This document shows, in pieces, positions 18,901 to 64,000 of a stretch of DNA of 64,000 bases (its first letter is position 1; the number at the start of each line of letters is the position of its first letter). The DNA is taken from NCBI GenBank assembly GCA_002269645.1, contig NIVC01001187.1:1-64000 (forward strand), written 5' to 3'. Both the position numbers and the translations under genes were made by a program. The notes under the pieces were generated by a model that did no database searches, was not told the DNA's origin, and worked only from the letters and a program-made list of their open reading frames with translations. This DNA is from Macrostomum lignano (lineage: Eukaryota).

Positions 18901-20027
18901 GACACCTGGGCTCAGAGTGCCATTTCTGACACCTGGGCTCAGAGTGCCATTTCTGACACCTGGGCTCAGAGTGGCATTTCTGACACCTGGGCTCAGAGTG
19001 GCATTTCTGACACCTGGGCTCAGAGTGCCATTTCTGACACCTGGGCTCAGAGTGCCATTTCTGACACCTGGGCTCAGAGTGCCATTTCTGACACCTGGGC
19101 TCAGAGTGGCATTTCTGACACCTGGGCTCAGAGTGCCATTTCTGACACCTGGGCTCAGAGTGCCATTTCTGACACCTGGGCTCAGAGTGGCATTTCTGAC
19201 ACCTGGGCTCAGAGTGCCATTTCTGACACCTGGGCTCAGAGTGGCATTTCTGACACCTGGGCTCAGAGTGCCATTTCTGACACCTGGGCTCAGAGTGGCA
19301 TTTCTGACACCTGGGCTCAGAGTGGCATTTCTGACACCTGGGCTCAGAGTGCCATTTCTGACACCTGGGCTCAGAGTGGCATTTCTGACACCTGGGCTCA
19401 GAGTGCCGCATCCCCAGCCCAGAAGATGCTCACCTGCGTCTCCTCCGGCACCTGCGCGCCCCGATACGCGGCCGGCTTGCGCAGCCGCCGCTGAGTTGGA
19501 AACGCCGCCTTCAGCTGCGCCCGCCGATCCGCGAGCGCCGCCGCGGCCGCAGCCAGCTCGGGCTGACTGGCGGGCTGGTGAGCAGCGCTGGGCTGCAGCA
19601 GGCGGTACTGCTCAACAGCGAACTGGCGCCAGTCGGCAGTCATCTGGTCCCGCCTGCCGATCACCTGGGTGACCAGCCACTGCACCACGGGGAACACGTG
19701 GACGAAGTCGCGGCCCTGGATCTGGTGCGGCTCGATGGCGTGCGGACAGCGCATCCTGCGGAGGGCTCGCACGATTTTCTCTGTGAGGGCGATCTTCTGC
19801 CCGATGCTGGAGCCCTCGTGGAACAGCAGGTCGGCGTCAATGTCAACGCTGCAGCCCTGCACGCACCAGCAGAGGCCGCCTACCAGCTTGTCGAAGGCGG
19901 AGAGGCCACGGATTCTGGCACGGAAGTAGCCAGCAGAGACCAGCAGCTGAAGGCACTCGGCCTCCTTGGCCTCCTGGTCCTCATCCTTGCGGATGTCATA
20001 CTCGCCCTCTCTGTAGCGATGGGCCAT
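15933..20027 (-). CDS. CCDC93: Coiled-coil domain-containing protein 93 (Commander/CCC complex), ~597 aa; exons 20027-19434, 18032-17698, 17328-16878, 16346-15933
   Basis: N-terminal LQLLVSAGYFRARIRGLSAFDKLVGGLCWC and IEPHQIQGRDFVHVFPVVQWLV; C-terminal TKQFYCLYN...EREIQLLTS...YNKLVKDF match the recalled CCDC93 family sequence. Phases 0/2/0 are consistent, total 1794 nt. Confidence 0.93.
16352..16860. repeat. Intronic 15-bp minisatellite (gagattggtcatgat)n
   Basis: Fills CCDC93 intron 3 and degenerates toward the donor end. Confidence 0.95.
17350..17690. repeat. Intronic 27/29-bp minisatellite (gctgtgtgagcagtgatggagtctc[ac]ag)n
   Basis: Fills CCDC93 intron 2 almost edge to edge. Confidence 0.95.
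18070..19407. repeat. Intronic 27-bp minisatellite (ctgacacctgggctcagagtg[c/g]cattt)n, ~48 copies
   Basis: Fills CCDC93 intron 1. The body of the array has essentially a single dimorphic position (C/G). Confidence 0.97.
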
Positions 20028-21103
20028 GCCTGGCTGCAAAGTTTAAACCAAAAAGTTGAATTAAACAAAATGAAACAATAAAGCATAATAATTTAAAATG
20101 AAATTGAAGTCATTCTATATATTTTTATGATCATGCCCCCCTAGCTATAACACTAAATATAAACTGTAATTATAATATGGTAATTTATTTTCATTTTTTG
20201 ATAGTCAGATTCATAGTCTAGTTCTTATATATATAGATATAGCTTCTCTATTTATACTAGCCATGCAACTTAGTTTTCACTTTAACATATTTTTTTACAT
20301 TTTAAAGCACAATGTAAATAAAAAATATCAACAGAAAAAGAGACTATTTATTGTATATAAACAAAATATCCATTTTAGAAAATAGATGGCTATCAATATA
20401 AATAAATAAATCATATAGTTTCCTCATAGCTATGAAAATGACAATGGGAAATTACATGACTGTATAGATTTGATAGAATATACTACTATAAATTTGGTTA
20501 AACAAATATAAAATTTTATATATAGTTCCTAAGCCAGGGTGGAATAGTAAAGCCTAGAAAAAAATGAATTTTGCCAGTTTTAAAGCTTTTGTAAAAGGAT
20601 AAATTCAATGCCATATGTATATCATTTAGTTATAGTCTATATTTGGTATTTGGGTAAGAAGTACATACCCTAGAAATTTATAGGAATAGTCAAGAAATTT
20701 GGAATATATGTTGCTGTACAAAAAGTGATTTAGGGTTTTTAACATAAAATTTTAATATTTTGGTACATGATACATACTAAAAATAAAAAATTACATTAAT
20801 CAATAATAAATATAATATTTTTCCATGACAATATAACCCTAAAATTTGATGTTTCATTAGGCCTAATGCCAAACTGACCTCTACAATTTTAAAAGGTAGG
20901 GGTTTATTTTTGAAATTGCCTAACTTTTGAAATTTCACTTGGCTATATGATTTACTTTTTGACCAAAAATGCTATTTAACTTATGAAAAACCCCAAATAA
21001 AGCAAAAATTAATATAATTTTGGGTAAATGGCAAAAGTAGGCCTCGTAACTATATATAATTATATGATTAAGAATAAATGTCTTGTCATCTAATTAGGTA
21101 CTA

Positions 21104-21908
21104 CGAGGGGTGTTTCAAAATTAACGAGAATTTTGTAATAACTTTTGATTGGATGAATATATGAACCTGGAATTTTCACCTAACAATTTTACACATGAAC
21201 AACTAATAGCTTTATATTTTAAGCCTTATATAGCTGCACGCAACTGTGTAATCATAAATGAAAGATCATGCCTCAAAATTTTAAATTACAATTTTTGTCT
21301 ATGGCAAAAGACAAAAGTAACCAAGTTTGAATGTGTTCATCAAGTCAAAAATCCAGCACCATTTTTCATTTCTTCAGCAATTTCAGCAAGCTCTACAAAG
21401 CTGCCATTTATCTAGATACCCTTCTCGCAGCAATGCACCAGTTTTGTTAATTTCCTCCTCTAAAAAAACTTACAGATTTTTGGACCATCTATAGTCTCAG
21501 TTAGAAAAATTTGAGCCACTTTCACAGAATATTCTGTGGCCACATAAGTCAGAAATTGCAGCTTTAATCAGGAATGCTATGCAGCTCAAAACTGCAAGAT
21601 TATTCCCAAGCAACTTTGCCCATATAGAAAGCAGAAAGAGTGGGCCCTTGTGAGAAGTAGCCAAATTTAGCAGCAAAAGTTTAAAAGCCTTTAAATTTTA
21701 AACTTTTTGAGTCTTTTTGCCAGACAAAAATTGTAATCTTCAATATCGAGGCATGGACCTTCATATACAATTACATAATTGCATACAGCTATATAAGGCT
21801 TAAAATATAAAGCTATTAGTTGTTCATATTAGGTGAAAATTTCAAGTTCATATGTTTATCCAATCAAAAGTTATAACAAAATTCTTGTTACTTTTGAAAC
21901 ACCCCTTG
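21104..21908. mobile_element. Tc1/mariner-type MITE with ~200-bp imperfect TIRs and TA TSD
   Basis: TA|cgaggggtgtttcaaaattaacgagaatt... and ...aattcttgttacttttgaaacaccccttg|TA. The arms align over ~200 bp. No transposase ORF. Confidence 0.85.
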
Positions 21909-23149
21909 TACTATTTTCTAGGTTGGCATTTTTGCAGCTTAGTTGGACTTACCTTAGCTAGACTATTCACCATTAGCTTAATTGGCTGAAATTTGCTATA
22001 TTATAATATGGAAATTGATATAAACTCCTATAGTTAGCTAAGAATTATAAAATAGATTTATAAAACCAAGGAATAAAGCCAAACCATGCCATTTTTTATA
22101 TTTCTATTCATAGGAAATACAATTAGGCCCTATATAATATATTCAATATAAAATTAATAAGATTTTCTCCCTAGTTTTCTAACCAAAAAGCTTAAAAAAT
22201 ATTGACACAAGTTTTTAGGAATATCAATAGGGTACCACACACTCCAGATCATATGGTATACACACAAAAATTTGGGCATGCATTGACCTTGCATGCCAAA
22301 AGTAAGTGTGCAAAGTTGGCGTGTATCACTCCTAAAAAATAGTGTGCATGCATACCTAGCCTGCACTTCATAGAATCATGTGGAAGAGTTATTGTAAAGT
22401 ATAAAAAAGATGAAAATGGGTTCATTTTAAGCATAAATATCAAGCCTTCCAGGTTTTTAAGCCTGTAATAAAGCATTTAAACAAATCTGTATGTATTAAT
22501 TTTCCACTATAAATAGTACTATAGTAGGCCTAGTATCAAAAAATGAAAAATGACAAAAATGACAAAAAATGAACCAAATTATTTGCCAAAAAGGTTCATT
22601 ATGCAATTCAAAAAAGGTAATTTATGGTCACGTCATAATGTAAAAAAGTCATTTATTGTCACAACACTGGCATAGTTTTGAGAATAGGCATGTATTCAAT
22701 TTTTTGCATGCTATTTTTAATTAATAAATTTTTGTTTGGGTGTGCATCTAGCATGATTTGGACTATGGAAGATAGGCCTACCTAATAAAATGTAGAATCT
22801 GCAATAGGCCTAGAATTAGAATAGAATAGAATAGCATAAAAATGTAGAATCCATAGCGGAATGGTAAATTGTGGAATAAATTGTGGAATCTATTAACTTA
22901 GAGATAAAAATGCAAAATATTAGAATAAAAAATTGTAATTCTAAATACATAGGCCTATACTATAGTGTAGAAGGGCCTATGTTTATTCTAAGAAATTTAG
23001 TATCTTTTTTGCAAAATTAAATCTCTGCCAAAATAACAACTATCATATAATTTGTTTTAGTGTATGATTTTTTTTACCAAATAATTTTTGTTTTAATGAT
23101 GCAAATAATTTGTTTTAGTTTATTGATTGTTTTAATGCACAATACGTGA

Positions 23150-23840
23150 GCCAATAGGATGAGACGTTAACTACTATAAATACAAGGCAAAAATTATATT
23201 CTTTCTTTAACCTCGACCTTTCGGGTTCCTAACTCAGTTAACAGGAAATTAAGATTTCTTGGTTCTTCTGAATTAGTTATTTGAAGCAGTATTGCAAGTT
23301 AAATTACCGTGTTGGATAGAGTTGAGAGTGTCTTGTCAAAGCAGAGATTGCTAGTCAAGCGTGGTGCCCAGTAAAAGAGTGGAATACCCAATATAAAGGG
23401 TGAAATACCTAGTGTAAAGGTTGGATTACCCAGGAAGGGAGAATTTTCAGGCTGCTCCAGGTTAGCGTGATGCAGTTCTAAGTTGTGAGAGACAGTACTT
23501 AAAGAAGCTAGAAACCCCTCAGTCTGTGGTAAACGCCATGTCTGGACTGGACCATTTTAGGAATTTAGCAGTAGTTAGCAGTGTCTTGCTGCTTGGGCAC
23601 TGAAGCTACCAAGGGTAATTTGTAGGGACGATAGCCCATAATGTAAAAGTACATCTAAGTATAGAAATAGGATTCTTAGAAATAGCAAATTTAGCTAATT
23701 TAGTACAGTTTGACAATGATTAAACTTTAGAATTAAATAGAGAGAGCCAGTAGGCTTGCTACAACTTGGTGATTCAGTGGTGGAATTATAAGCTAGAAAG
23801 TAGAACCCCCCTGCGACAACTTGGTATCAGCTGTAGGATC
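23150..23840 (+). mobile_element. Possible LTR remnant with primer-binding-site-like junction
   Basis: CCAAT and TATAAA-like motifs at ~23150-23190; the region ends ...gcgACA-act-TGGTATCAGCTGTAGGAT (23822-23839), resembling a tRNA-complementary PBS. A similar gctACA-act-TGGTG motif occurs at ~23758. No 5-prime LTR boundary, TSD or gag/pol found. Confidence 0.35.
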
Positions 23841-24667
23841 CAATAGAAATAGAGAGAAGCACCTAGGCCTACAACAATAGCTATACCTATTTACTATATA
23901 GCAATGTGACCATGAAAAGGATGTATAAGGAAATTTTAGTATGATTTTATAGAGGCAAACTTAACTAAAAATAGTAGCATTTATTAGGCCTACTCAAAGT
24001 AGTAAGTATAGGTTCTTTCATGAATAATATGGCCAATAGGTGTTGAAAATATTTCCATAATTTTCTCTCTAGTAGGGGCCTACTAGCAGTTTGGTCAAAT
24101 TTTGAAGGCTTTATTGTTGTAAGATTATATATATAGTTCATAGTGCACTTCTGCTACCCTGCATATGCATTTTACTTAAATTTAGTAGAATCCATAGTTC
24201 ATTCCACTTAGTTCATTACGGTTATCATTCTACTGTGGATTCTGCACGAGGTTTGACCGCCGTTTCCTGGCTGTCTATTTGAATAGTCCTTGTTGGTGAT
24301 ACTATTCTTAAGTACAATTAAAGGAAACCAATGTGAATTCCACCTAAACAATTTACATTGCGGTTTTAGCATACTTCTTTACTGCGCATTCTAGCACCTA
24401 CCTTACATCGTCCACCGGTCGTAATAATGTTCCTAATCCCATATCCGAAACACTAATTTATAATTTCATATAAAAGTACTATTTAAAATTTAGCCTGACT
24501 CGCTTTTCCTGACTTTTTATCAAAAATATTCGTACATCAACATAAAATTTGCAAACTGCTCTCTTATAAGTACTTTCTCAAGTAAAAAAATTAAATAATA
24601 AATTAGCCAGTATTACTTTGCTATGTTGTATTGTACTTATTTTTCTAGAATTTTCCTTTTTCCGAAG

Positions 24668-24925
24668 GGGCCTTTTCATATTGCTTGTCTGGTTCCAGAA
24701 CCAGAACCAATTTGTGAAGTATAACTTTTTGTCTCCATAACTAGAGGGAGATACGTGCTAAAAGTTTTTATTATTGAACGAAAATCGCCAAGAAGAAAGT
24801 GAAAAATTGTGCCAAGTTAGGTTGTTAAGGCAGTCAAATATTAACAGAGTTTAATGGTTATACTGCTGTTTTTCTTGGAATTCCGAACCGATTCTGGTTC
24901 TGGAATTGGTAATATGAAAAGGCCC
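24668..24925. mobile_element. PIF/Harbinger-like MITE, 258 bp
   Basis: 15-bp perfect TIR GGGCCTTTTCATATT / AATATGAAAAGGCCC, an inner inverted ttccagaaccagaa, and a 3-bp direct flank AAG on both sides. Confidence 0.7.
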
Positions 24926-25723
24926 AAGGAATGGGGTTGGTGGGTGTGGAGTGGTCTTGGTTTATCATTTGCGTAATAGGTACACTAGGGAAACCACGTG
25001 GGTGACATAATTAACTTTTTATGTTTTCAAGCCTTTCAGACTTTTATGGAGTCGGCCTGGGTTAAGTTTTTCATTTTTTCAGATTTTTCAGTATTTTTCA
25101 ATATTTTTGTAGCTAATTAATGTAGGCCCTACTAAGGCACTATGTTGCAATTTTATCTTTAAATTCAATTAAAGTTCCACTAGTCTGCTATGATATGGCA
25201 ATAAGAAGCCATGGATATAAAGGTTTTTAGACAGATCATATAGATATAAATATGGTTAGGCCTAGGCCTATAAGAACAATTTTTATAGGCCTAAATACTA
25301 AAATACCTCACTAAGCTCTTATATCTAGATCACTCAATAACTTGAAGACTTAAGACATCAAATACCAATTACCATTGAAGCCATTGCTTTGATATGTAGG
25401 GGTAGATCAGTAAAAATGCTTTTGAAATATATGAATGTTTTAAATTTCAAAGCTTTTATAAGATTTTGTTAGCTAGGCCTAGCCTACCTAGGTCTATTGC
25501 TATATTTATTTGCCTTGTAGGTTGTAGGCTATAGCATAATAGATTAATGTAGCCCCCCTTATTTGAAATAGAAGAGCAGTTCCAATAAGCTCTTAAGTCC
25601 CCAAGAATAGGAACTCAAGCAATAAAGAATTTTCCATATCCATATTATAATAATTAGGGTAGGCCTAATAGGGCTAAAATTGAGATAAATATTTTCATTT
25701 TCAAATGCAAAGGAGCTCTTAAG

Positions 25724-26252
25724 TAGGGATTGCTGCAATATCCCAGATTTTTGTGATCCTGGGATTTAATCCCAGATTTGGCCAATCCTAGGATTGAATC
25801 CCGGGATCAGAATAATACAGATTTTTATGCTTCCAGGTTGAAATTTTAAGGCAAAATATGTGCTTATTGCTTTTTTGCTTACTTTTTTATTATTAGACTA
25901 TAGAGATAGGCCTAATGATCTATTTGTAAATGAAAAACAGCATTGTCTTGTGACCTATTAAAGTAAATAGTATAAATATACTAATTAGTAAAGAAGCAAA
26001 TCATATCAAAATTTAAATGGGAATTAATTTCATATTTGAATCTGTGATGTGGGGTTTAAAAAGGTGCCACATGACGTGAGGCAATTAATGGAAATTAGCA
26101 CAGTATAATAAACTAGTTGTGGGCCTAATTATGTTTATATTATAGCATTTTTTGTAAAAATATTAGCAAAAATTGTCCTGGGATTTAGAGTCCCAAATTT
26201 AGGCCCAATCCCAGGATTTCAGGATCCTGGGATCCTAGGATTGCAATCCCTA
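25724..26252. mobile_element. hAT-like MITE, 529 bp
   Basis: TIR TAGGGATTGC / GCAATCCCTA, subterminal (a)tccc(a/g)gga motifs at both ends, and an 8-bp TSD ctcttaag / ctctcaag (7 of 8 identical). Confidence 0.8.
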
Positions 26253-26731
26253 CTCTCAAGTCCATAGGATAAGGATCTAAACAGTAGAAATTTTGATAAT
26301 GCATGCACATTGGGATAGTAAGAGGCATAAATTAAGATAAATAATACCAATAAAGAGGCTGCCTAGTATTTACTACTACTAAAGAGGCTATATTGAAAAT
26401 AATTCAATGTTTTTGATGGGCCTATTCTATATTCTTAAGAACACATTTATAAGTAGACCATAACTCTTACAAAAGATCTTATTAAACATAGAAGATTTTG
26501 TTATTTTATTGGTTACTTAAACATAAAAAGAGAGGGCCAAAAGGAAAGAAAAAGAGAGAAGAAAAGCAAAAAAGAAAGGAGAAAAAGAAAAGAAAGAAAA
26601 GTGGTAAAAGAAAAGAAAAGAAAGACATAGAGAGAACTGAGAAAGGAAAGAAAGAAAAAAAAGAAAGAAAATATTGAAAAAGACAATCAAGTTAATGGGT
26701 ATTGAACATCAGATATGTTCTAAATTACCTA

Positions 26732-27695
26732 CAAGGGGTGTCCAAAAAGTAGTGATACTTTTAACCGTAGCTCTCATTCTATACCTTCCTGTGATTTAAA
26801 ATTTTATGAACTGATAGCGGAAAATCTCTTCTACAGACTGCTTTTTAAATTTTTAAAATTGATACTAGAGAACAAAAGTTATACCCACGAAAGTAACAGT
26901 ACCTATACCATAGAGTTACACAAATTATATCGAAATTTATAATAGTCGACTTCTGCACTCATTCATTAAGAAGGCATCGATAAATGTCTTGTTAAAGCAA
27001 TACCAAACCCCAATTGCAAAATGATACTCACTGTGACTGACTGAAATTTATCTATGGACGGGATCAGGTGCAGAAAAATAAAGCATTAAATAAAGCAAAC
27101 AGAGGAGCTTGCATTTTGCGATTCGTTTATGATTTCATTGCCCATACTCAACAACACACAAGGATGTGCACTCAGTTGTTGCTCAGCAAAGTACCATCTT
27201 CACTCTTTGGGGCGCTGGCCATGGTGCCTCAGAAATTCACGCAAAACTTTGCTCTGCGCACGGATCCTCTGCGGTCAGCAAAATGGCAGTTTATCGATGG
27301 ATGGAGCAGTTCAGCGAGGGAAGGACTGACTTGGCAGATCAGCATTGGATGGGGCGGCCATACGTTCATCGACCTGATGTACTAGCGGACTCCATTCTGG
27401 ATCTTCTTGACCATTAGAGAGATCGCTGACAGGTTGGACAAGACAAAATCAACAATTCATCGAAGCTTCCTCGGCATGGATCTCGTGAAGCTCAGCCTAT
27501 AATTTGTGTAACTCTGTGGTGCGGGTACTGCTGCTTTCGTGGGTGTAACTTTTGTTCTCTGGTATCAATTTTAAAAATTCAAAAAGCAGTCTGTAGAAGA
27601 GATTTTCCGCTATCAGTTCATAAAATTTTAAATCACAGGAAGGTATAGAATAAGAGCAACAGTTAAAAGTATCACTACTTTTTGGACACCCCTCG
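26732..27695 (+). mobile_element. Internally deleted mariner element with ~200-bp TIRs and a transposase N-terminal HTH remnant
   Basis: TA|caaggggtgtccaaaaagtagtgatac... and ...gtatcactactttttggacacccctcg|TA. The internal frame (~27160-27480) reads GHGASEIHAKLCSAHGSSAVSKMAVYRWMEQFSEGRTDLADQHWMGRP, typical of a mariner HTH ending in the GRP motif. It has a stop codon and no DDD domain. Confidence 0.88.
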
Positions 27696-28244
27696 TACAA
27701 AACACTTTTCAATGTTGCATTTTTGCAACTATAATAGCTAGCAGCAAGAGGTCCTAATGACCCATCTATGATATAACTTTCTTGTTATAGTTAGTGCACT
27801 ACTAGCCAGTGGCACTTGGCAAGAATAAGAAATAGAAAATTCACTAATTATAGATATAGATAGGCTACAGGAAAAATTTAAGATATGGCTACAGCTATGG
27901 ATATAGAAATAAATTTTAATATAATAGAACTTTAAATTTATAAAAGTATATTTGATGTCATTAGTTGTTGCTATTTCCAATAAAAATCAATCTGGCTTTT
28001 GTGGATAGGTTTATTATTTATAAAGTTTTCATTTTTGGACTTTAGAATTATAATGGCTATAAGAGTCTATTTTTGTCTTTTAAAATTATATTTATTCATT
28101 TATATGTGCCTGGAACTCTTGTTTTAGGATTTGTATTCATTTTATCCCACTATAGGTTTATTTAAATTATATGAGCTAAAATATAATTTTAAGCAATATT
28201 CTTTTGATATTACTATAAATAAGCTATATGGGTATTGTGTAGTT

Positions 28245-28400: not shown

Positions 28401-29204
28401 AATTTCTCTCTGCCCAATTGTCAATTTTAATTATAAATTTGTAATGAGACACAGACTAAGTCTGAGTGGCTGTTTACAAAGTCTGTTTTTAAAGTTTTCA
28501 AAGAAAGACAGCATATCAGTTCAAAATTTTGAATAGAATAGAAATAGGGTAACTGGCAGCAAAGGAAAGTGAGGTGGTAGCTAGCCAACAATGGGGATAC
28601 AAATTTAGTGCATTGATTGGGCTGACTGTGCAATAGAATCAAACTTTCTAAGAATGCATCAAATTATTATAAACTTGTTTTTAATTCTGTGTCTTCAGCA
28701 TCAAATTATATTTTAGCGCATCAGTGGTGCAACCAGAGACCCATGGGGGATTTTGGAGGGTAAAGACCCAGGGAGGGGCGGGGTAATAGGGGCAACCTGT
28801 GGCCCATGTACTTGAACTGAAAACCTCATCTGGCCCTCAAGTGGAGAAGGTTGCTGACCTTTGGTGTAGTTATTTTGAAAATTTTCTTTAATATTCAAAA
28901 AGATTACAACAGTACAGGAAAAATAATATTGATAAAACTCTGAATTCCAAAAATAAAAAGTGTTCTCTTAAAAACTGCTTTGCGAAATTATAATTTGCAT
29001 TTAACTTTGGTTGTAAGGCTTGAACAAACCAAAGTTCATATAGAATCTCAGAGGGTTGTATAATCGGTTATATGTATGTCATTTTTAGTGTATGAATGTT
29101 ATTAAGTATAAGATGCTCAAATACCTAGATCAGTGTAGTATTGTATTGAGCAAACTGTTAGACTAAACTTATCTGGCCACTGCAGACCAAACAGTTCAGC
29201 CGCC

Positions 29205-31359
29205 ATGTCATCAGCCGCTGCATTGGAAAATCAGAGGCTCGACCTTCAGGAGCTGCGCGAACTTCGCGCCAGCAGCCAGCGGCCGCGGGTGCAGGACCTG
29301 CTGGACCTGCAGATTCGCCGCATTGAGACGGACTTGGCCGCTGCCGCAGAGGCCGCCGGCGGCGACCAGCCAGCGGGCAAGTCGGCCGGCTCGGCCGCCA
29401 GCCAGTCGGACAGGTCCTTCACCACCGAGATCAAAACCTACGCCTGGGACGACTCGGACAAATTCTGCAAGCTCTATGTGTCCGAGGGCCTGTCCGGGGT
29501 GGGCAGCCTCGACAAGGACGCCGTGACGGCCGAGTTCACCGAGAACTCCGTGCTGCTGCGGGTTTGCGGCCTGAACGGTCGTGACAGGGAGCTGCGAATT
29601 CCCCGCCTGTACGACCGCATCCTGCCGGACAGCTGCTCGTTCAAGGTCAAGTCCGATCAGGTGCTTCTGAGCCTGCGAAAGGCCGCCTGCAACAGGTGGG
29701 TCCATGCTTGCTTGGCTGTGGGACATAAACTCGGGTAGAAGAGGGCCATGACCATATGCAGTCAGGCAGAAGAGGGCTATGACCATATGCACTCAGGTAG
29801 AAGAGGGCCATGACCATATGCACTCAGGTAGAAGAGGGCCATGACCATATGCACTCAGGTAGAAGAGGGCCATGACCATATGCACTCAGGTAGAAGAGGG
29901 CCATGACCATATGCACTCAGGTAGAAGAGGGCCATGACCATATGCACTCAGGTAGAAGAGGGCCATGACCATATGCACTCAGGCAGAGGGCCATGACCAT
30001 ATGCACTCAGGCAGAGGGCCATGACCATATGCAGTCAGGCAGAGGGCCGTGACCATATGCACTCAGGCAGAGGGCCATGACCATATGAAGTCAGGCAGAG
30101 GGCCATGACCATATGCAGTCATGCAGAGGGCCATGACCATATGCACTCAGGCAGAGGGCCATGACCATATGCACTCAGGCAGAGGGCCATGACCATATGC
30201 AGTCAGGCAGAGGGCCGTGACCATATGCACTCAGGCAGAGGGCCATGACCATATGCACTCAGGCAGAGGGCCATGACCATATGCTGTCAGGCAGAGGGCC
30301 GTGACCATATGCACTCAGGCAGAGGGCCATGACCATATGAAGTCAGGCAGAGGGCCATGACCGTATGCAGTCAGGCAGAGGGCCATGACCATATGCAGTC
30401 AGGCAGAGGGCCATGACCATATGCAGTCAGGCAGAGGGCCATGACCATATGCAGTCAGGCAGAAGAGGGCCATGACCATATGCAGTCAGGCAGAGGGCCA
30501 TGACCATATGCAGTCAGGCAGAGGGCCATGACCATATGCTGTCAGGCAGAGGGCCGTGACCATATGCACTCAGGCAGAGGGCCATGACCATATGAAGTCA
30601 GGCAGAGGGCCATGACCATATGCAGTCAGGCAGAGGGCCATGACCATATGCAGTCAGGCAGAGGGCCATGACCATATGCAGTCAGGCAGAGGGCCATGAC
30701 CATATGCAGTCAGGCAGAAGAGGGCCATGACCATATGCAGTCAGGCAGAGGGCCATGACCATATGCAGTCAGGCAGAGGGCCATGACCATATGCAGTCAG
30801 GCAGAGGGCCATGACCATATGCAGTCAGGCAGAGGGCCATGACCATATGCAGTCAGGCAGAGGGCCATGACCATATGCAGTCAGGCAGAGGCCATGACCA
30901 TATGCTGTCAGGCAGAGGGCCATGACCATATGCAGTCAGGCAGAGGGCCATGACCATATGCAGTCAGGCAGAGGGCCATGACCATATGCAGTCAGGCAGA
31001 GGGCCATGACCATATGCAGTCAGGCAGAGGGCCATGACCATATGCAGTCAGGCAGAGGGCCATGACCATATGCAGTCAGGCAGAGGGCCATGACCATATG
31101 CAATCAGGCAGTCAGGTGAGCCTCCCCCATTTCGCACTGCAGGTGGGAATTCGTCACCGAGCACGAGCGGCGGGCCAGCGAAGCCAAGAAGGCGGCCAGC
31201 AGCAAGAAGGCGCCGGGCGCTGACGAGGACCCCAGCGCCAGCATGATGGGGCTGATGCGCCAGATGTACGAGGAGGGCGACGACGAGATGAAGCGGACCA
31301 TCGCCAAGGCGTTCTCGGAGTCGCAGAGCAAGCGAGGCGCGGGCGATCCGGGACTTTGA
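29205..31359 (+). CDS. CACYBP: Calcyclin-binding protein (Siah-interacting protein), 235 aa; exons 29205-29695, 31143-31359
   Basis: N-terminal helical hairpin (DLQELRELR...RPRVQDLL), CS domain (IKTYAWDDSDKFCKLYV...KVKSDQVLLSLRK) and SGS domain (DPSASMMGLMRQMYEEGDDEMKRTIAKAF). Phase-2 intron, total 708 nt. Confidence 0.93.
29735..31110. repeat. Intronic 31/28-bp minisatellite (agagggccatgaccatatgca[c/g]tcaggc)n
   Basis: Fills the single CACYBP intron. 31-bp units at the 5-prime end, mostly 28-bp units afterwards. Confidence 0.97.
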
Positions 31360-31753
31360 ACTGCAGGGCCGCTGGAGTGTTTGGAGTCTTAGTTTATTCA
31401 AGACCACCTCTGTGGTTTATTTTCTATTCAGCCAATTATTTTCTACTGAAATCGCGTCTGCATGCGAATTCGTGTCAGTTAATGTTTTCTATGTTGCTTC
31501 AATCGTGTCAGCCGTAATAAAGTTACAGTTGCTGGCGGCCCGTCAGTATGGCGCCTTTGGAAATTTGAATTCTTGTCCGGTGGAACTGCCAGGCCGCTTT
31601 TAGGCTTGCTGTTTGTTGTAAATCTGGTCTGTTGTGATTTGCGTCTTTTACAGACTTGACCTGCTTTAGAATTGAATTTAGGCCAATTAAACCGACTATT
31701 TTTGTCCTCATCCCGTTCGGGAAACCAGTAAGTCATGATCACTTCCGTTCAGG

Positions 31754-34220
31754 CATGACCATTAGGGAAACCAATCACCCATGACCATTATGGAAACCAA
31801 TCTATGACCATTAGGGAAACCAATCACCCATGACCAATAGGGAAACCAATCTATGACCATTAGGGAAACCAATCACCCATGACCATTAGGGAAACCAATC
31901 ACCCATGACCATTAGGGAAACCAATCACCCATGACCAATAGGGAAACCAATCACCCATGACCATTAGGGAAATCAATCACCCATGACCATTAGGGAAATC
32001 AATCACCCATGACCATTAGGGAAACCAATCATCCATGACCATTAGGGACACCAATCACCCATGACCATTAGGGAAACCAATCTATGACCATTAGGGAAAC
32101 CAATCACCCATGACCATTAGGGAAACCAATCTATGACCATTAGGGAAACCAATCACCCATGACCATTAGGGAAACCAATCACCCATGACCATTAGGGAAA
32201 CCAATCTTCCATGACCATTAGGGAAACCAATCTTCCATGACCATTAGGGAAACCAATCTTCCATAACCATTAGGGAAACCAATCACCCATGACCATTAGG
32301 GAAACCAATCACCCATGACCATTAGGGAAACCAATCTTCCATGACCATTAGGGAAACCAATCTTCCATGACCATTAGGGAAATCAATCACCCATGACCAT
32401 TAGGGAAACCAATCACCCATGACCATTAGGGAAACCAATCATCCATGACCATTAGGGAAACCAATCACCCATGACCAATAGGGAAACCAATCTATGACCA
32501 TTAGGGAAACCAACCACCCATGACCATTAGGGAAATCAATCACCCATGACCATTAGGGAAACCAATCACCCATGACCATTATGGAAACCAATCTATGACC
32601 ATTAGGGAAACCAATCACCCATGACCAATAGGGAAACCAATCTATGACCATTAGGGAAACCAATCACCCATGACCATTAGGGAAACCAACCACCCATGAC
32701 CATTAGGGAAACCAATCACCCATGACCATTAGGGAAACCAATCTATGACCATTAGGGAAACCAATCACCCATGACCATTATGGAAACCAATCTATGACCA
32801 TTAGGGAAACCAATCACCCATGACCAATAGGGAAACCAATCTATGACCATTAGGGAAACCAATCACCCATGACCATTAGGGAAACCAATCACCCATGACC
32901 ATTAGGGAAACCAATCTTCCATGACCATTAGCGAAACCAATCTTCCATGACCATTAGGGAAACCAATCTTCCATGACCATTAGGGAAACCAATCACCCAT
33001 GACCATTAGGGAAACCAATCACCTATAACCATTAGGGAAACCAATCACCCATGACCATTAGGGAAACCAATCATCCATGACCATTAGGGAAACCCATTAC
33101 CTATGACTATTAGGGAAATCAATCACCCATGACCATTAGGGAAACCAATCACCCATGACCATTAGGGAAACCAATCATCCATGACCATTAGGGAAACCAA
33201 TCACCCATGACCATTAGGGAAACCAATCATCCATGACCATTAGGGAAACCAATCACCCATGACCATTAGGGAAACCAATCATCCATGACCATTAGGGAAA
33301 CCCACTACCTATGACTATTAGGGAAATCAATCACCCATGACCATTAGGGAAACCAATCACCCATGACCATTAGCGAAACCAATCTATGACCATTAGGGAA
33401 ACCAATCACCCATAACCATTAGGGAAACCAATCTATGACCATTAGGGAAACGAATCATCCATGACCATTAGGGAAATCAATCACCCATGACCATTAGGGA
33501 AACCAATCATCCATGACCATTAGGGAAACCAATCACCCATGACCATTAGGGAAACGAATCATCCATGACCATTAGGGAAACCAATCACCCATGACCATTA
33601 GGGAAACCAATCATCTATGACCATTAGGGAAACCAATCATCCATGACCATTAGGGAAACCAATCACCCATGACCATTAGGGAAACTCATCCATGACCATT
33701 AGGGAAACCAATCACCCATGACCATTAGGGAAACCAATCTTCCATGACCATTAGGGAAACCAATCATCCATGACCATTAGGGAAACCAATCACCCATGAC
33801 CATTAGGGAAACCAATCACCCATGACCATTAGGGAAACCAATCACCCATAACCATTAGGGAAATCAATCACCCATGACCATTAGGGAAACCAATCATCTA
33901 TGACCATTAGGGAAACCAATCACCCATGACCATTAGGGAAACGAATCATCCATGACCATTAGGGAAACCAATCACCCATGACCATTAGGGAAACTCATCC
34001 ATGACCATTAGGGAAACCAATCACCCATGACCATTAGGGAAACCAATCTTCCATGACCATTAGGGAAATCAATCACCCATGACCATTAGGGAAACCAATC
34101 ACCCATGACCATTAGGGAAACCAATCTATGACCATTAGGGAAACCAATCTATGACCAGTAGGGAAACCAATCACCCATGACCATTAGGGAAACCAATCTA
34201 TGACCATTAGGGAAACCAAT
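31754..34220. repeat. 2.5-kb 26/23-bp minisatellite (catgaccattagggaaaccaatcacc)n between CACYBP and THUMPD1
   Basis: Roughly 95-100 copies. Most units carry one TTAGGG and one CCAAT. Confidence 0.97.
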
Positions 34221-34398
34221 CCAGTTGATGTTAATAAAAATTTACAATGCAATTAACTACAAACCGGCCATGCAGTGGCCCAGCGAGCGCAAATCCTTGC
34301 TGTTTTTCGCAAGTGAACAGAAAACCGAGATAGCCTACCTAAATTAGTAGCAATACAGGCGTGCAATCTCCCACCGCCCCTCCGCGATTGCGATTCAG

Positions 34399-37098
34399 TC
34401 GGGCCGCCAGCTGGACAAGCGCAAGCGGAAGGCCGCCTACCGCCGGCAGGCCGCTCTGGCCGCCAAGAGGCCGCGGGGCGGCCGCCAGCAGCTGCTGACC
34501 GCTGGCTGGCGCGGCCTGCTGGTCACCTGCAACAAGCGGGAGCGCGAGTGCGTCGGCGAGGCCCTCGACCTGCTGGACACTTTCCTGCCTGACGATCCAG
34601 CTGAAGACAACGAAGGCGCCGAGGAAGATGCTGATGATGGCGACAACGCTGAGGATGACATCCAGCGGTGCCTGGAGCGGGAGCGGGCTCGCGGCGGCGG
34701 GCTGGGCCTCCGGGCGGCCGCTGCGCAGCCGTGCGAGCACCTGCCGACTAAGGCGAGTGTTGACGCCGAGTGAGACTCACTGCTGGCGCTGAGGCAATTC
34801 TGCCTCCTGCCGCGGACTTTCTAATAGTCAACGCCGAGCCTAGAAATCTGGAGTCAGCGGACTTGGGCATGACTGGTCTTCCCCTCCCTGCCTCTGGTCA
34901 GCTTGTGGCAGTGCACACAGCCCCACCCCCCCCCCTGCGAACCGTCCCAGGCCGCGACCTTCCACCCCTAACTCCCACCGCCTGCTCATGATAGTTTTCG
35001 ATACATATCGCTGACCTCACGCCGCCGGCTAATTCGCGCAGGTGCCGAACTGCGTATTCGTCGGCGTCTCGCTGCCGGACTCGCGCCTGCCGTGGCTCTT
35101 CGATGTCACCGACGCTGTCTTTGAAGCGGCTGTGGCGGCGGCCGCCCGAGGCGACGGCAGTCGCGGCGTCGGCGGCCGCCATATCCTGCGGCTGCTGCCG
35201 GTGGAGGCCACCTGCGCCTCCGGCCTGCAGGACATCGGCGAGGCCTTCGAGTCGCTGTGGACCGCCTTCGTGGCTGCTGATCGAGTCACAGGTAAGCTGG
35301 CCCGCTTTTTTTGGTAGTCACGAGCACGAGATTTCCCCCAGGAACTTCTCCCACCCAGATTCTCCTACTGAGATTCTCCCACCGAGATTCATCCACAGAG
35401 ATTTTCCCACAGAGATTCATCCACAGAGAGTCTCACACCGAGATTTCCCCATCAAGATTCTCCCCAGAGATCCTCCCACTGAGATTCTCCCACAGAGATT
35501 CTCACACCGAGATTCTCCCACCGAGATTCTCACACCGAGATTCTCCCACCGAGATTCTCACACCGAGATTCTCCCACCGAGATTCTCACACCGGGATTCT
35601 CACACCGAGATTCTCCCACCGAGATTCTCACACCGAGATTCTCACACCGAGATTCTCACACCGAGATTTTCCCACCGAGATTCTCCACAGAGATCCTCCC
35701 ACTGAGATTCTCCCACAGATTCTCACACCGAGATTCTCCCACAGAGATTCTCGAACCGAGATTCTCCCACAGAGATTCTCACACCGAGATTCTCCCACAG
35801 AGATTCTCGAACCGAGATTCTCCCACAGAGATTCTTACACCGAGATTCTCCCACCGAGATTCTCACACCGAGATTCTCCCACAGAGATTCTCACACCGAG
35901 ATTTTCCTACAGATTCTCCCACAGAGATTCTCACACCGAGATTGTCCCACAGAGATTCTCACACCGAGATTCTCACACCGAGATTTTCCCACCGAGATTC
36001 TCCACAGAGATCCTCCCACTGAGATTCTCCCACAGATTCTCACACTGAGATTCTCCCACAGATTCTCACACCGAGATTCTCACACCGAGATTCTCCCACA
36101 GAGATTCTCACACCGAGATTCTCCCACCGAGATTCTCACACCGAGATTCTCCCACAGAGATTCTTACAACGAGATTCTCCACAGAGATCCTCCCACTGAG
36201 ATTCTCCCACAGAGATTCTCACACCGAGATTGTCCACAAAGATCCTCCCACTGAGATTCCCCCACCAAGATTCTCTCCAGAGATCCTCCCACTGAGATTC
36301 TCCCACCAGATTCTCCCACTGAGATTCTCCCACAGAGATTCTCACACCGAGATTGTCCTAAAGAGATTATCCCACAGAGATTCTCCCACCAAGATTCTCC
36401 CCAGAGATCCTCCCACTGAGATTCTCCCACGAGATTCTCCCATCGCGATTCTCAAGAAAAACTAAAAAATGGGGGAAGTTCATGCGGGAGAATCTCAGAA
36501 GCTCGCGGTTGACAGCATCCAAATATTGGTTACGCACGTTAAAGTACACATTGTCCTCTGTATCCACGCAGCCGAATAAGATGCGCCTCCGCCCACCCTC
36601 TGGCCAACAGCCGCTAAGCCGACTTTCACGGTACACTTCAAGGCGCGCAACTTCGACAAGCTGGAGCGTCAGGATGTCATCAACCGGGTCTTCACCGCTG
36701 TGAAATCTGTCAGTCCCGACTGGTCAGTTGACCACGACCGCGCCAGCGTTGTCATCGATGTCAACGTGCTGCAGCGGGTCACGTGTCTCAGCCTGCTGCG
36801 CAACTTTCGCCGCTACCGCAAGTACAACCTCAGCGAGGTGGTCGCGCATTCCGCGGGCACGGAGGCTGCGACGACTGATGCGGCGGAGTCTGGGAAGACT
36901 GATGCAGCGGAGGCTGGCAAGACTGATGCGGCGGAGTCTGGGAAGACTGATGCGGCGGAGGCTGGCAAGACTGATGCGGCGGAGTCTGGGAAGACTGATG
37001 CGGCGGAGTCTGGGAAGACTGATGCGGCGGAGGCTGGGAAGACTGATGCGGCGGAGGCTGGGAAGACTGATGCGGCGGAGTCTGGGACGACTCCTTGA
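34399..37098 (+). CDS. THUMPD1: THUMP domain-containing protein 1 (Tan1 homolog), 363 genomically encoded aa with no initiator ATG; exons 34399-34752, 35042-35291, 36611-37098
   Basis: KRKRKAAY...GWRGLLVTCNKRERECVGEALDLL, acidic linker, NCVFV, RHILRLLPVEATC, TFTVHFKARN, CLSLLRNFRRYRKYNLSEVV match the THUMPD1 family. Intron 1 needs a GC donor (AAG|GCGAGT). An in-frame TAG lies 45-50 nt upstream of the first acceptor with no ATG in between. Confidence 0.88.
35330..36450. repeat. Intronic 14-16-bp minisatellite (gagattctc[a/c]cac[c/aga])n
   Basis: Fills THUMPD1 intron 2. Confidence 0.95.
36872..37090 (+). repeat. Coding 24-bp repeat encoding (TDAAE[S/A]GK) x 9 at the THUMPD1 C-terminus
   Basis: In frame within the last exon, ahead of the TGA at 37096-37098. 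Confidence 0.85.
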
Positions 37099-37394: not shown

Positions 37395-37655
37395 TTGGAA
37401 GTTAGTGGAAACTGCCAGAATCTGTTTAAAGACAGCGGAAACTGCCAGAATCTACTGAGGGACAATGGAAACTGCCAGAATCCAATGAGAGAAGGTGGAA
37501 ACTGCCAGAATCCAATGAGAGATGGTGGAAACTGCCAGAATCCAATGAGAGATGGTGGAAACTGCCAGAATCCAATGAGAGATGGTGGAAACTGCCAGAA
37601 TCCAATGAGAGATGGTGGAAACTGCCAGAATCCAATGAGAGATGGTGGAAACTGA
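37395..37655. repeat. 30-bp minisatellite (ggaaactgccagaatccaatgagagatggt)n
   Basis: About 8 copies downstream of THUMPD1, degenerate at the 5-prime end. Confidence 0.9.
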
Positions 37656-38306
37656 AGATCTAGCTATGAAGGTGAAAACTTGCCTGGACTAAAATTTAAT
37701 TTTTTCTGTGACGCAAATTCCCAAGGTCGGATTAGGGACACTAATCTTCAACAGTTGAAGAATCAAAATTGTTGCTGATGGCAGCGAATGTCCCAGTAAC
37801 CCACTCGAGCCCGGCAGAGCTGATTAATGCTGGATTTTCAGCTCCGGATTGCGGAAGCAAGCGGGTTCGACTTTGACCACTCGAAAAGAATATTCTGGTT
37901 GTCCAGCTGAGCACCCACTTCAGATTTTGCTCCCAGTGTTGCAAGCTTTCTGCTGTAATCTGCTTCAAGTTGTTGCTTCAAGAAACTTGCCTGTCAGCAG
38001 TTTTCACATTTTAATTCTGCTCCTAAATTTGATCCGATCGGTAAAGTTTTCGAAACGAGAAAGTTTTTTCTCTTTGAAGTGCTTGTGACAGCAGCTGGTG
38101 GCATCTGGCGCCGACGCCCCCGCGCCCCCGCGCCAGGCTATTTAGCTGCCAGAGGGCCGCCCAGCCCGAGCTTCTGCAGTCCGACTTGGCTCAGCAACTC
38201 CCGCAAGCCAATCGAAGCTTTGATTCAAACCAGCAAATTCCCATAGCGAGATCTCGCCTTGCTACTTAACTCCAAAACAGCATCGAACTGTCAGCTGCGC
38301 TTCCTC

Positions 38307-50920
<12,614 letters not shown>

Positions 50921-51298: not shown

Positions 51299-64000
<12,702 letters not shown>

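What the first reader, a model, noticed from the sequence alone, without database searches (positions are those of the whole stretch)
34340..34470. THUMPD1 has no start codon: its ORF begins exactly at a splice acceptor, in frame for an AUG supplied by a trans-spliced leader
Seen: the conserved THUMPD1 N-terminus (SGRQLDKRKRKAAY...) starts at ttcag|TCG (34399) after a pyrimidine-rich tract. Reading upstream in frame reaches TAG at ~34348 with no ATG. The nearest ATG-bearing candidate exon (34270-34312, A|GTGAA) ends in phase 1 and cannot join this phase-0 acceptor. Established: flatworm spliced leaders end in AUG, and that AUG can act as the initiator Met. Inference: SL trans-splicing builds M-SGRQ..., giving ~364 aa, close to the usual THUMPD1 size. 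An essential tRNA-acetylation cofactor would then be translatable only after trans-splicing.
Basis: partly seen in the sequence, partly recalled or inferred. Interest (0 to 1): 0.85.

Follow-up and report, generated by a model that had tools for sequence, protein, structure and literature searches.

The report
Spliced-leader AUG starts Macrostomum THUMPD1
In the flatworm Macrostomum lignano the THUMPD1 gene has no ATG of its own, so its start codon almost certainly comes from the AUG at the end of the trans-spliced leader; this mechanism has been known in flatworms since 2006, so the case is clean but ordinary.

Summary
The window is bases 1-64000 of Macrostomum lignano scaffold NIVC01001187.1 (assembly Mlig_3_7). 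The THUMPD1 reading frame opens at 34399, right after ...gattcag. In-frame TAG TAG stops lie 16 codons upstream, with no ATG between. I also found that the whole 363-codon CDS has no in-frame ATG. GenBank annotates this copy and two other copies as "partial" proteins that start at this exact base. A published table flags the gene TRANSSPLICED. The M. lignano spliced leader ends in ...TTGCATG, so joining it gives M-SGRQLDKRKRK, which matches the length of orthologue N-termini. THUMPD1 is gene 2 of a two-gene transcriptional unit behind a calcyclin-binding-protein gene (CACYBP); a 2.5-kb satellite has stretched the spacer between them. An ATG at 34247, with the donor at 34313, joins 34399 in phase 0. 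That 22-codon exon has non-coding composition (GC3 9/22, against 21/22 just after the acceptor), and no annotated transcript includes it. Use of the leader AUG as initiator was shown in Schistosoma in 2006. This is therefore a new member of a known kind. Trans-splicing is documented; initiation at the leader AUG is inferred.

The parts
29186..31359 (+). Upstream cistron: calcyclin-binding-protein (CACYBP) gene, BOX15_Mlig027504g1. The acceptor is ctgcag|A at 29185/29186 and the gene's own ATG is at 29205. Exons are 29186-29695 and 31143-31359, with stop TGA at 31357-31359. The intron holds a 28-nt tandem repeat (29740-31111).
   Evidence: Gene call with Siah-Interact_N and CS domains. Spliced model of 241 aa is an exact match to PAA71033.1, 'BOX15_Mlig027504g1, partial'. 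Tandem repeat.
31516..31521 (+). AATAAA, the probable poly(A) signal of the CACYBP mRNA, 157 nt after its stop codon.
   Evidence: Read directly from the sequence. Its use is inferred.
31754..34221 (+). 26-nt satellite (about 97 copies, consensus CATGACCATTAGGGAAACCAATCACC) filling most of the spacer between the two cistrons. Its copy number differs among the three genomic copies.
   Evidence: Tandem Repeats Finder. The distance from the end of the upstream CDS to the acceptor is 946 nt in L001, 1419 nt in L002 and 3039 nt here.
34222..34398 (+). Unique segment just upstream of THUMPD1, removed by trans-splicing (GC 46%). It contains AATAAA at 34233-34238, ATGs at 34228, 34247 and 34270, a GTGAAC donor-like site at 34313, in-frame TAG TAG at 34345-34350, a pyrimidine-rich tract, and the acceptor AG at 34397-34398 (TTCAG, fitting the published TNCAG core of the trans-splice acceptor motif).
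   Evidence: Motif from PMC8629364. The segment is 98-99% identical in the other two copies.
34247..34312 (+). Hypothetical cis 5' exon (the rival): ATG plus 21 codons, MQLTTNRPCSGPASANPCCFSQ, phase 0 to the acceptor at 34399 across an 86-nt intron. Judged not to be coding.
   Evidence: Enumeration of ATG/donor/acceptor combinations. GC3 is 9/22, against 78% for the CDS, binomial P about 2e-4. It is absent from the annotated transcripts.
34399..34752 (+). THUMPD1 exon 1. Its first base is the trans-splice junction. It encodes SGRQLDKRKRKAAY...LPTK (118 codons, GC 72%). The donor is a GC type (AAG|GCGAGT).
   Evidence: The annotated CDS starts at 34399. The annotated proteins read ...LPTKVPNC..., which confirms the junction.
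35042..35291 (+). THUMPD1 exon 2 (VPNCVFVG...DRVT, ends in phase 1).
36611..37098 (+). THUMPD1 exon 3. It holds the THUMP-domain C-terminal part, followed by a 24-nt coding repeat (AESGKTDA-like, 36860-37092). Stop TGA is at 37096-37098.
   Evidence: The annotated CDS ends at 37098.

Best explanation
THUMPD1 of Macrostomum lignano is the second gene of a two-gene transcriptional unit (CACYBP, then THUMPD1). The pre-mRNA is cut into two mRNAs. The 35-nt spliced leader is trans-spliced onto the acceptor at 34398/34399. Because the leader ends in AUG, the mature mRNA reads ...UUGCAUG|UCGGGCCGCCAG..., which gives M-S-G-R-Q-L-D-K-R-K-R-K. The leader AUG lies 32 nt from the cap, is the first AUG on the mRNA, and is the only in-frame AUG in the whole message, so it serves as the initiator. 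Without trans-splicing no AUG-initiated THUMPD1 can be made.

Shown: the gene structure, the lack of any genomic in-frame ATG, the leader sequence (from the literature), the published trans-spliced status, and the annotated 5' end at this base.

Inferred: that ribosomes actually initiate at the leader AUG, and that both genes are transcribed from one promoter.
For: 1. The window is identical to M. lignano NIVC01001187.1.
2. The frame opens at 34399 after an acceptor, with in-frame TAG TAG upstream and no ATG between.
3. There are 0 in-frame ATGs in 363 codons. At a Met frequency of 1.5-2.2% the chance of this is about 3e-4 to 4e-3. The next AUG on the mature mRNA is 232 nt downstream and out of frame.
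4. The leader ends in ATG in two independent reports.
5. PMC5816591 supplementary table: Mlig006645.g2, Mlig027504.g2 and Mlig012469.g2 are THUMPD1, flagged TRANSSPLICED. The mRNA length of 1213 nt equals the 1116-nt CDS plus 97 nt, which leaves no genome-encoded 5' UTR.
6. In GenBank all three copies are 'partial' and start at the same base. The TBONE pipeline places 5' ends at peaks of leader-containing reads.
7. Composition switches at the junction: GC 46% upstream against 72% in exon 1, and GC3 is 21/22 in the first 22 codons.
8. M+SGRQL before DKRKRK matches orthologues, which mostly have Met plus 4-8 residues before this motif.
9. The upstream gene is g1 of the same transcriptional unit in all three copies. 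The spacer is under 1 kb once the satellite is subtracted, which meets the published operon criterion.
10. Precedent: more than 40 S. mansoni cDNAs need the leader AUG.
Against: - I saw no raw leader-containing reads, cDNA, ribosome-profiling or peptide data. The trans-spliced status rests on a published annotation table and on the position of the annotated 5' end.
- The leader AUG has a weak Kozak-type context (U at -3, U at +4).
- On the neighbouring CACYBP mRNA the same AUG would be out of frame with the real start. Ribosomes must therefore often scan past it, so initiation at the leader AUG may be inefficient.
- A phase-0 cis exon is possible on paper. Acceptors shared between cis- and trans-splicing are reported in parasitic flatworms.
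- The four available copies are 98-99% identical in the upstream segment, so conservation says nothing about constraint.
Confidence: 0.82

Rival explanations
1. A short cis-spliced 5' exon supplies the start codon. Transcription would begin near 34222-34246. The ATG at 34247 opens a 22-codon exon (MQLTTNRPCSGPASANPCCFSQ), which is spliced from CAA|GTGAAC (34312/34313) to the same acceptor at 34399 in phase 0. This would be either the main mRNA or a minor isoform alongside the trans-spliced one.
For: - The combination is open and in phase, with an 86-nt intron.
- The segment is intact in all four copies.
- Acceptors shared between cis- and trans-splicing are described for parasitic flatworms.
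Against: - The annotated mRNA/CDS of all three copies begins at the acceptor, is flagged TRANSSPLICED, and has no 5' exon.
- GC3 of the candidate exon is 9/22, against 78% for the CDS and 21/22 just after the acceptor (P about 2e-4).
- GTGAAC does not fit the GT[G/A]AG donor motif found at 65% of M. lignano donors.
- It would put 27 residues before DKRKRK, where flatworm orthologues have 5-9.
- The extension has no homologue among the hits.
- The exon sits 9 nt after an AATAAA and directly after a satellite, with no evidence of a promoter.
Confidence: 0.08
2. Translation starts at a near-cognate codon, for example the CUG at codon 5 or an AUU/AUC in the retained upstream segment, rather than at the leader AUG. 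It could do so on trans-spliced or on unprocessed RNA.
For: - Near-cognate codons exist: CTG at codons 5, 20, 32 and 33, and ATC and ATT in the 16 codons upstream.
- The leader AUG has a weak sequence context.
- Non-AUG starts on leader-bearing mRNAs are reported in nematodes.
Against: - An AUG that comes first on the mRNA, 32 nt from the cap and in frame, is normally strongly preferred over near-cognate codons.
- A start at the codon-5 CUG would lose only 4 residues, so it could be no more than a side product.
- Upstream near-cognate codons are removed by the documented trans-splicing.
Confidence: 0.05
3. The ATG-less copies are untranslated duplicates or pseudogenes, and a functional THUMPD1 with its own ATG lies elsewhere in the genome.
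For: M. lignano is a hidden polyploid with many duplicated genes. The copies are too similar to one another for a real test of selection.
Against: - All three copies keep the full open frame with every conserved motif.
- Differences between copies are 3-6 synonymous against 1-3 non-synonymous.
- The gene is expressed, and it sits in the table's 'Neoblast, stringent' class.
- The protein search returned no other M. lignano THUMPD1 cluster.
Confidence: 0.03

Closest known systems
[quoted passage not shown]
   Same: A flatworm leader ending in AUG. The acceptor is in phase 0 with a conserved ORF that has no genomic start codon of its own. The leader AUG is the first AUG on the mRNA.
   Different: - The organism is a free-living macrostomorph, not a parasitic trematode.
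- The whole CDS is free of Met codons, so there is no downstream AUG to fall back on.
- Translation from the leader AUG was tested experimentally in Schistosoma. It has not been tested here.
M. lignano SL trans-spliced operon genes (Wudarski et al. 2017; Ustyantsev & Berezikov 2021)
   Same: - The downstream gene lies in the same annotated transcriptional unit as an upstream gene on the same strand.
- The acceptor has the TNCAG core.
- The spacer is inflated by repeats and is under 1 kb after repeats are subtracted.
- The gene is conserved and neoblast-enriched, as those papers report for trans-spliced genes in general.
   Different: Those papers do not discuss genes whose only start codon is the leader AUG. 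The satellite-stretched spacer here (3.0 kb raw) is at the long end.
THUMPD1 / yeast Tan1 (adaptor of NAT10/Kre33 for tRNA ac4C formation)
   Same: THUMP domain, the N-terminal basic KRKRK stretch, and the LVTCN, LP(V)xATC, FK(A)RN and RKYNL motifs all align with animal THUMPD1.
   Different: - Only 28-35% identical to other animals.
- A C-terminal (AESGKTDA)n repeat of variable length.
- No genomic ATG and no internal Met, whereas the trematode orthologues are intronless with a genomic ATG and 5-8 Met.

Membership tests
SL trans-spliced mRNA of M. lignano | [quoted passage not shown] | tested here: met
   ...ctcccaccgcccctccgcgattgcgATTCAG|TCG at 34398/34399. Five of the six motif positions match (TNCAG fits; position -6 is A). 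Motif from PMC8629364.
SL trans-spliced mRNA of M. lignano | Leader-containing transcripts or reads that end at this acceptor | tested here: met
   Met through published data only. The gene is flagged TRANSSPLICED in the PMC5816591 supplement, and the annotated 5' end of all three copies is at this base. I did not see raw reads.
SL trans-spliced mRNA of M. lignano | No competing cis donor used upstream of the acceptor | tested here: inconclusive
   A GTGAAC donor-like site lies 86 nt upstream. Its use cannot be checked without reads. It does not fit the GT[G/A]AG motif.
ORF initiated by the spliced-leader AUG (Cheng et al. 2006 class) | The leader ends in AUG | tested here: met
   From the literature...TTTATTGCATG. 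There is no SL RNA gene in the window.
ORF initiated by the spliced-leader AUG (Cheng et al. 2006 class) | The first base of the acceptor exon is codon position 1 of the conserved ORF | tested here: met
   TCG at 34399 is the first codon of SGRQLDKRKRK.
ORF initiated by the spliced-leader AUG (Cheng et al. 2006 class) | No genomic in-frame AUG able to produce the conserved N-terminus | tested here: met
   No ATG between the TAG TAG at 34345-34350 and 34399, and none in any of the 363 codons.
ORF initiated by the spliced-leader AUG (Cheng et al. 2006 class) | Translation demonstrably starts at the leader AUG | not testable with these tools
   Needs initiation-site ribosome profiling, N-terminal proteomics or a reporter assay.
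Operon (polycistronic transcriptional unit), downstream gene | An upstream same-strand gene in the same transcriptional unit, a repeat-adjusted spacer under 1 kb, and a trans-spliced downstream gene | tested here: met
   The g1/g2 names are shared in all three copies. The 3039-nt spacer minus the 2468-nt satellite is 571 nt. TRANSSPLICED flag. Criterion from PMC8629364. The polycistronic precursor itself was not seen.
THUMPD1/Tan1 | THUMP domain plus conserved N-terminal module; best hits are THUMPD1 | tested here: met
   PF02926 at 2.5e-08, above the cut-off. The named hits are nearly all THUMPD1/Tan1. Conserved columns in the alignment. The published table gives it as the reciprocal best hit of human THUMPD1.
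THUMPD1/Tan1 | Acts with NAT10 in tRNA ac4C formation | not tested
   Function is inferred from orthology only.

The most novel reading that the evidence does not exclude
Translation of M. lignano THUMPD1 depends wholly on trans-splicing, because the gene lost its genomic ATG (and every Met codon) in the Macrostomum lineage; trematode orthologues keep a genomic ATG at the same place. Within one operon the same leader AUG has opposite effects. It is the only start for cistron 2 (THUMPD1). On cistron 1 (CACYBP) it opens a 47-codon out-of-frame upstream ORF that overlaps the real start. How efficiently ribosomes use the leader AUG would then set the relative protein output of the two genes, in a gene that is enriched in stem cells (neoblasts).
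Probability: 0.25. Interest if true: 0.45.

Novelty: new member of a known kind. Interest (0 to 1): 0.3.

Why it matters
- Annotation: it explains why GenBank lists M. lignano THUMPD1 as a 'partial' protein. The protein is complete once the leader's AUG is added, so pipelines for flatworms should add that Met instead of marking such genes as truncated.
- Test case: M. lignano is the flatworm with working transgenesis, and this CDS has no other AUG. That makes it a clean natural substrate for measuring how well the leader AUG initiates. The neighbouring CACYBP mRNA is an internal contrast, because the same AUG is out of frame there.
- What it does not do: it does not change what is known about the mechanism, which was established in Schistosoma in 2006.

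Tried and rejected
- Rfam scan of the whole window at gathering thresholds: no hits.
- Search for the leader sequence in the window with up to 3 mismatches: none, so no SL RNA gene lies here.
- Direct transcript evidence from the protein collection: the THUMPD1 cluster holds only the three GenBank genome-derived models and one unrelated 54-aa ENA fragment. There is no leader-bearing transcript contig and no other Macrostomum species.
- Full-text search for the gene identifiers: nothing. PMC8629364 has no held supplements. The Wudarski 2017 supplements hold no gene tables. CACYBP/g1 is not in the held part of the PMC5816591 tables.
- Conservation among paralogous copies as a test of the cis-exon rival: the copies are 98-99% identical in the upstream segment and in intron 1, so the test has no power.
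- An ATG created by a G-to-A change in copy L002 (equivalent to window 34361): it is out of frame and lies in the removed segment.
- Alternative acceptors at 34351 and 34359, and distant upstream ATG/donor pairs inside the tandem repeats: mechanically possible, but they have weak or no pyrimidine tracts, or are repeat-derived, and nothing supports them.
- An alternative GT donor for intron 1 (34757 or 34770): it breaks the frame. The GC donor at 34753 is the one that reproduces the annotated protein.
Full report
**What the window is.** A 22.7-kb locus fetched from GenBank assembly GCA_002269645.1 (Macrostomum lignano Mlig_3_7, scaffold NIVC01001187.1, positions 24399-47098) matches window 24399-47098 at 100%. 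Window coordinates therefore equal scaffold coordinates, and the organism is the free-living flatworm M. lignano.

**The observation.**
- The sequence at 34368-34410 reads ...tctcccaccgcccctccgcgattgcgattcag|TCGGGCCGCCAG.
- From 34399 the frame encodes SGRQLDKRKRKAAYRRQAALAAKRPRGG....
- Upstream in the same frame there are 16 codons without ATG, then TAG TAG at 34345-34350.
- The gene model that reproduces the GenBank protein is:
  - exon 1, 34399-34752, with a GC-type donor (AAG|GCGAGT);
  - exon 2, 35042-35291;
  - exon 3, 36611-37098, ending in stop TGA.
- The product has a THUMP domain (Pfam 2.5e-08). Its best hits are THUMPD1/Tan1 of trematodes and vertebrates.
On the mature mRNA the next AUG after the junction is 232 nt downstream and out of frame. 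At Met frequencies of 1.5-2.2%, a Met-free protein of this length has a chance of about 3e-4 to 4e-3.

The ATG at 34270 does give a 43-nt, phase-1 exon. But the ATG at 34247, in another frame, is open for 22 codons up to the same donor-like site (CAA|GTGAAC, 34312/34313) and joins 34399 in phase 0. So the sequence alone does not rule out a cis-spliced start. Three things argue against it:
- Its GC3 is 9/22. The CDS overall is 78%, and the first 22 codons after the acceptor are 21/22 (binomial P about 2e-4). Overall GC jumps from 46% to 72% at 34399.
- GTGAAC does not fit the GT[G/A]AG donor motif reported for M. lignano.
- It would place 27 residues before the DKRKRK motif, where flatworm orthologues have 5-9.

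**Evidence for trans-splicing.**
- GenBank holds three copies of this gene: PAA71034.1 at this locus, PAA71038.1 and PAA84641.1. All are labelled "partial" and all begin with S-G/D-R-Q.
- In all three loci the annotated CDS starts at the base after the CAG.
- The annotation paper states that mRNA 5' ends were set by mapping leader-containing reads and cutting transcriptional units at those peaks (PMC5730564).
- A supplementary table of Grudniewska et al. 2018 lists "Mlig006645.g2, Mlig027504.g2, Mlig012469.g2 - THUMPD1" with the flag TRANSSPLICED, in the "Neoblast, stringent" class. The mRNA length is 1213 nt. That equals the 1116-nt CDS of that copy plus 97 nt, which leaves no room for a genome-encoded 5' UTR.
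- The leader is CGGTCTCTTACTGCGAAGACTCAATTTATTGCATG (PMC8629364; the same 3' end is given in PMC5173321).
- Joining the leader to 34399 gives AUG UCG GGC CGC CAG..., that is M-SGRQLDKRKRK. The result is 364 residues, with Met plus five residues before DKRKRK. Orthologues mostly have Met plus 4-8 residues there.

**Context: an operon.**
- The next gene upstream on the same strand is a calcyclin-binding-protein gene (CDS to 31359). My spliced model matches PAA71033.1, "BOX15_Mlig027504g1", exactly, and THUMPD1 is "g2" of the same unit. The same g1/g2 pairing holds in the other two copies.
- After the CACYBP stop there is an AATAAA at 31516-31521. A 26-nt satellite then runs from 31754 to 34221, followed by 177 nt of unique sequence up to the acceptor.
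- The spacer is 3039 nt here, 1419 nt in L002 and 946 nt in L001. The satellite-subtracted spacer is 571 nt.
- This fits the published picture of M. lignano operons, in which spacers are inflated by repeats and the repeat-adjusted threshold is 1 kb.
- CACYBP appears to have a trans-splice acceptor too (ctgcag|A at 29185/29186) and its own ATG 19 nt downstream. On that mRNA the leader AUG is out of frame and would open a 47-codon upstream ORF overlapping the real start. So ribosomes must often pass the leader AUG, which has a weak context (U at -3). This is the main reason I do not put initiation at the leader AUG on THUMPD1 above about 0.85.

**Comparison with relatives.** The THUMPD1 genes of Paragonimus, Fasciolopsis and Echinostoma are intronless. 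They have a genomic ATG four to nine residues before the (D/N)K(R/Q)KRK motif, and they contain 5-8 Met codons. The ATG-less state is therefore not general to flatworms. It arose on the Macrostomum side. No other Macrostomum sequences were available to date the loss.

**What is known.** The mechanism is established. All reported flatworm leaders end in AUG (PMC12582326). Cheng et al. 2006 found the leader AUG in frame in 28% of trans-spliced S. mansoni transcripts and required by more than 40 cDNAs (as summarised in PMC9851317). The terminal ATG of the Macrostomum leader has been noted as a likely start codon (PMC10468722). I found no paper that singles out THUMPD1 or lists M. lignano genes that depend on the leader AUG.

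**Verdict.** It is a new example of a known kind, not a new mechanism. Trans-splicing at this site is documented by published annotation. Use of the leader AUG as initiator is a strong inference, not a demonstration. Calling THUMPD1 "essential" is not justified; from my own knowledge, yeast tan1 mutants are viable.

Noticed in passing
window 29186-29345: On the upstream CACYBP mRNA the leader AUG would be out of frame with the native ATG (29205). It would open a 47-codon upstream ORF (MTKQFSRHVISRC...) that overlaps the real start. GenBank also labels this gene 'partial', only because its frame stays open to the trans-splice site.
   Followed up: partly
window 34753-35041: THUMPD1 intron 1 is a GC-AG intron (AAG|GCGAGT ... 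cgcgcag|G). The nearby GT alternatives break the frame, and the annotated proteins confirm the junction.
   Followed up: yes
window 36860-37092: A 24-nt coding repeat ((A/S)ESGKTDA-like) at the THUMPD1 C-terminus varies among copies, giving products of 331, 371 and 379 aa in GenBank. The genomic reading at this locus gives 363 aa, but the GenBank model for this same locus has 331 aa. The annotation therefore skips 96 nt inside the repeat, probably an alignment artefact.
   Followed up: partly
window 29740-31111, 31754-34221, 35346-36453, 37403-37600: Long tandem arrays fill the CACYBP intron (28-nt unit), the spacer between the two genes (26-nt unit, about 97 copies) and THUMPD1 intron 2 (14-nt unit). 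A further array lies downstream (30-nt unit). Copy numbers differ between the three genomic copies.
   Followed up: partly
window 61513-64000 versus 43851-45883; L001 = scaffold 67850-90569, reversed: The scaffold carries a second copy of the whole CACYBP-THUMPD1-VWD-gene block in inverted orientation, 93-97% identical. The window's right end already reaches the inverted copy of the VWD-domain gene. This could be a real inverted segmental duplication or an assembly join of duplicated chromosome copies.
   Followed up: no
window 43746 onward (+ strand); also 38300-43000: A large downstream gene encodes repeated VWD, C8 and TIL domains (mucin- or zonadhesin-like; 726 aa called before the locus end here, and a 1493-aa product called in the sister copy L001, also running over the end of its locus). 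EGF-like Cys-rich ORFs and further tandem repeats lie before it.
   Followed up: no
window 20001-28000: A block of low G+C (29-35%) stands out against the 45-63% of the rest of the window. I did not examine it.
   Followed up: no
L004 2990-3003; L008 2993-3003: In Paragonimus (ttacag|ctg|ATG) and Echinostoma (aaacag|a|ATG) an acceptor-like CAG sits 3 nt and 1 nt before the genomic THUMPD1 start codon. This hints that a trans-splice site next to the start codon may be old in this gene.
   Followed up: no
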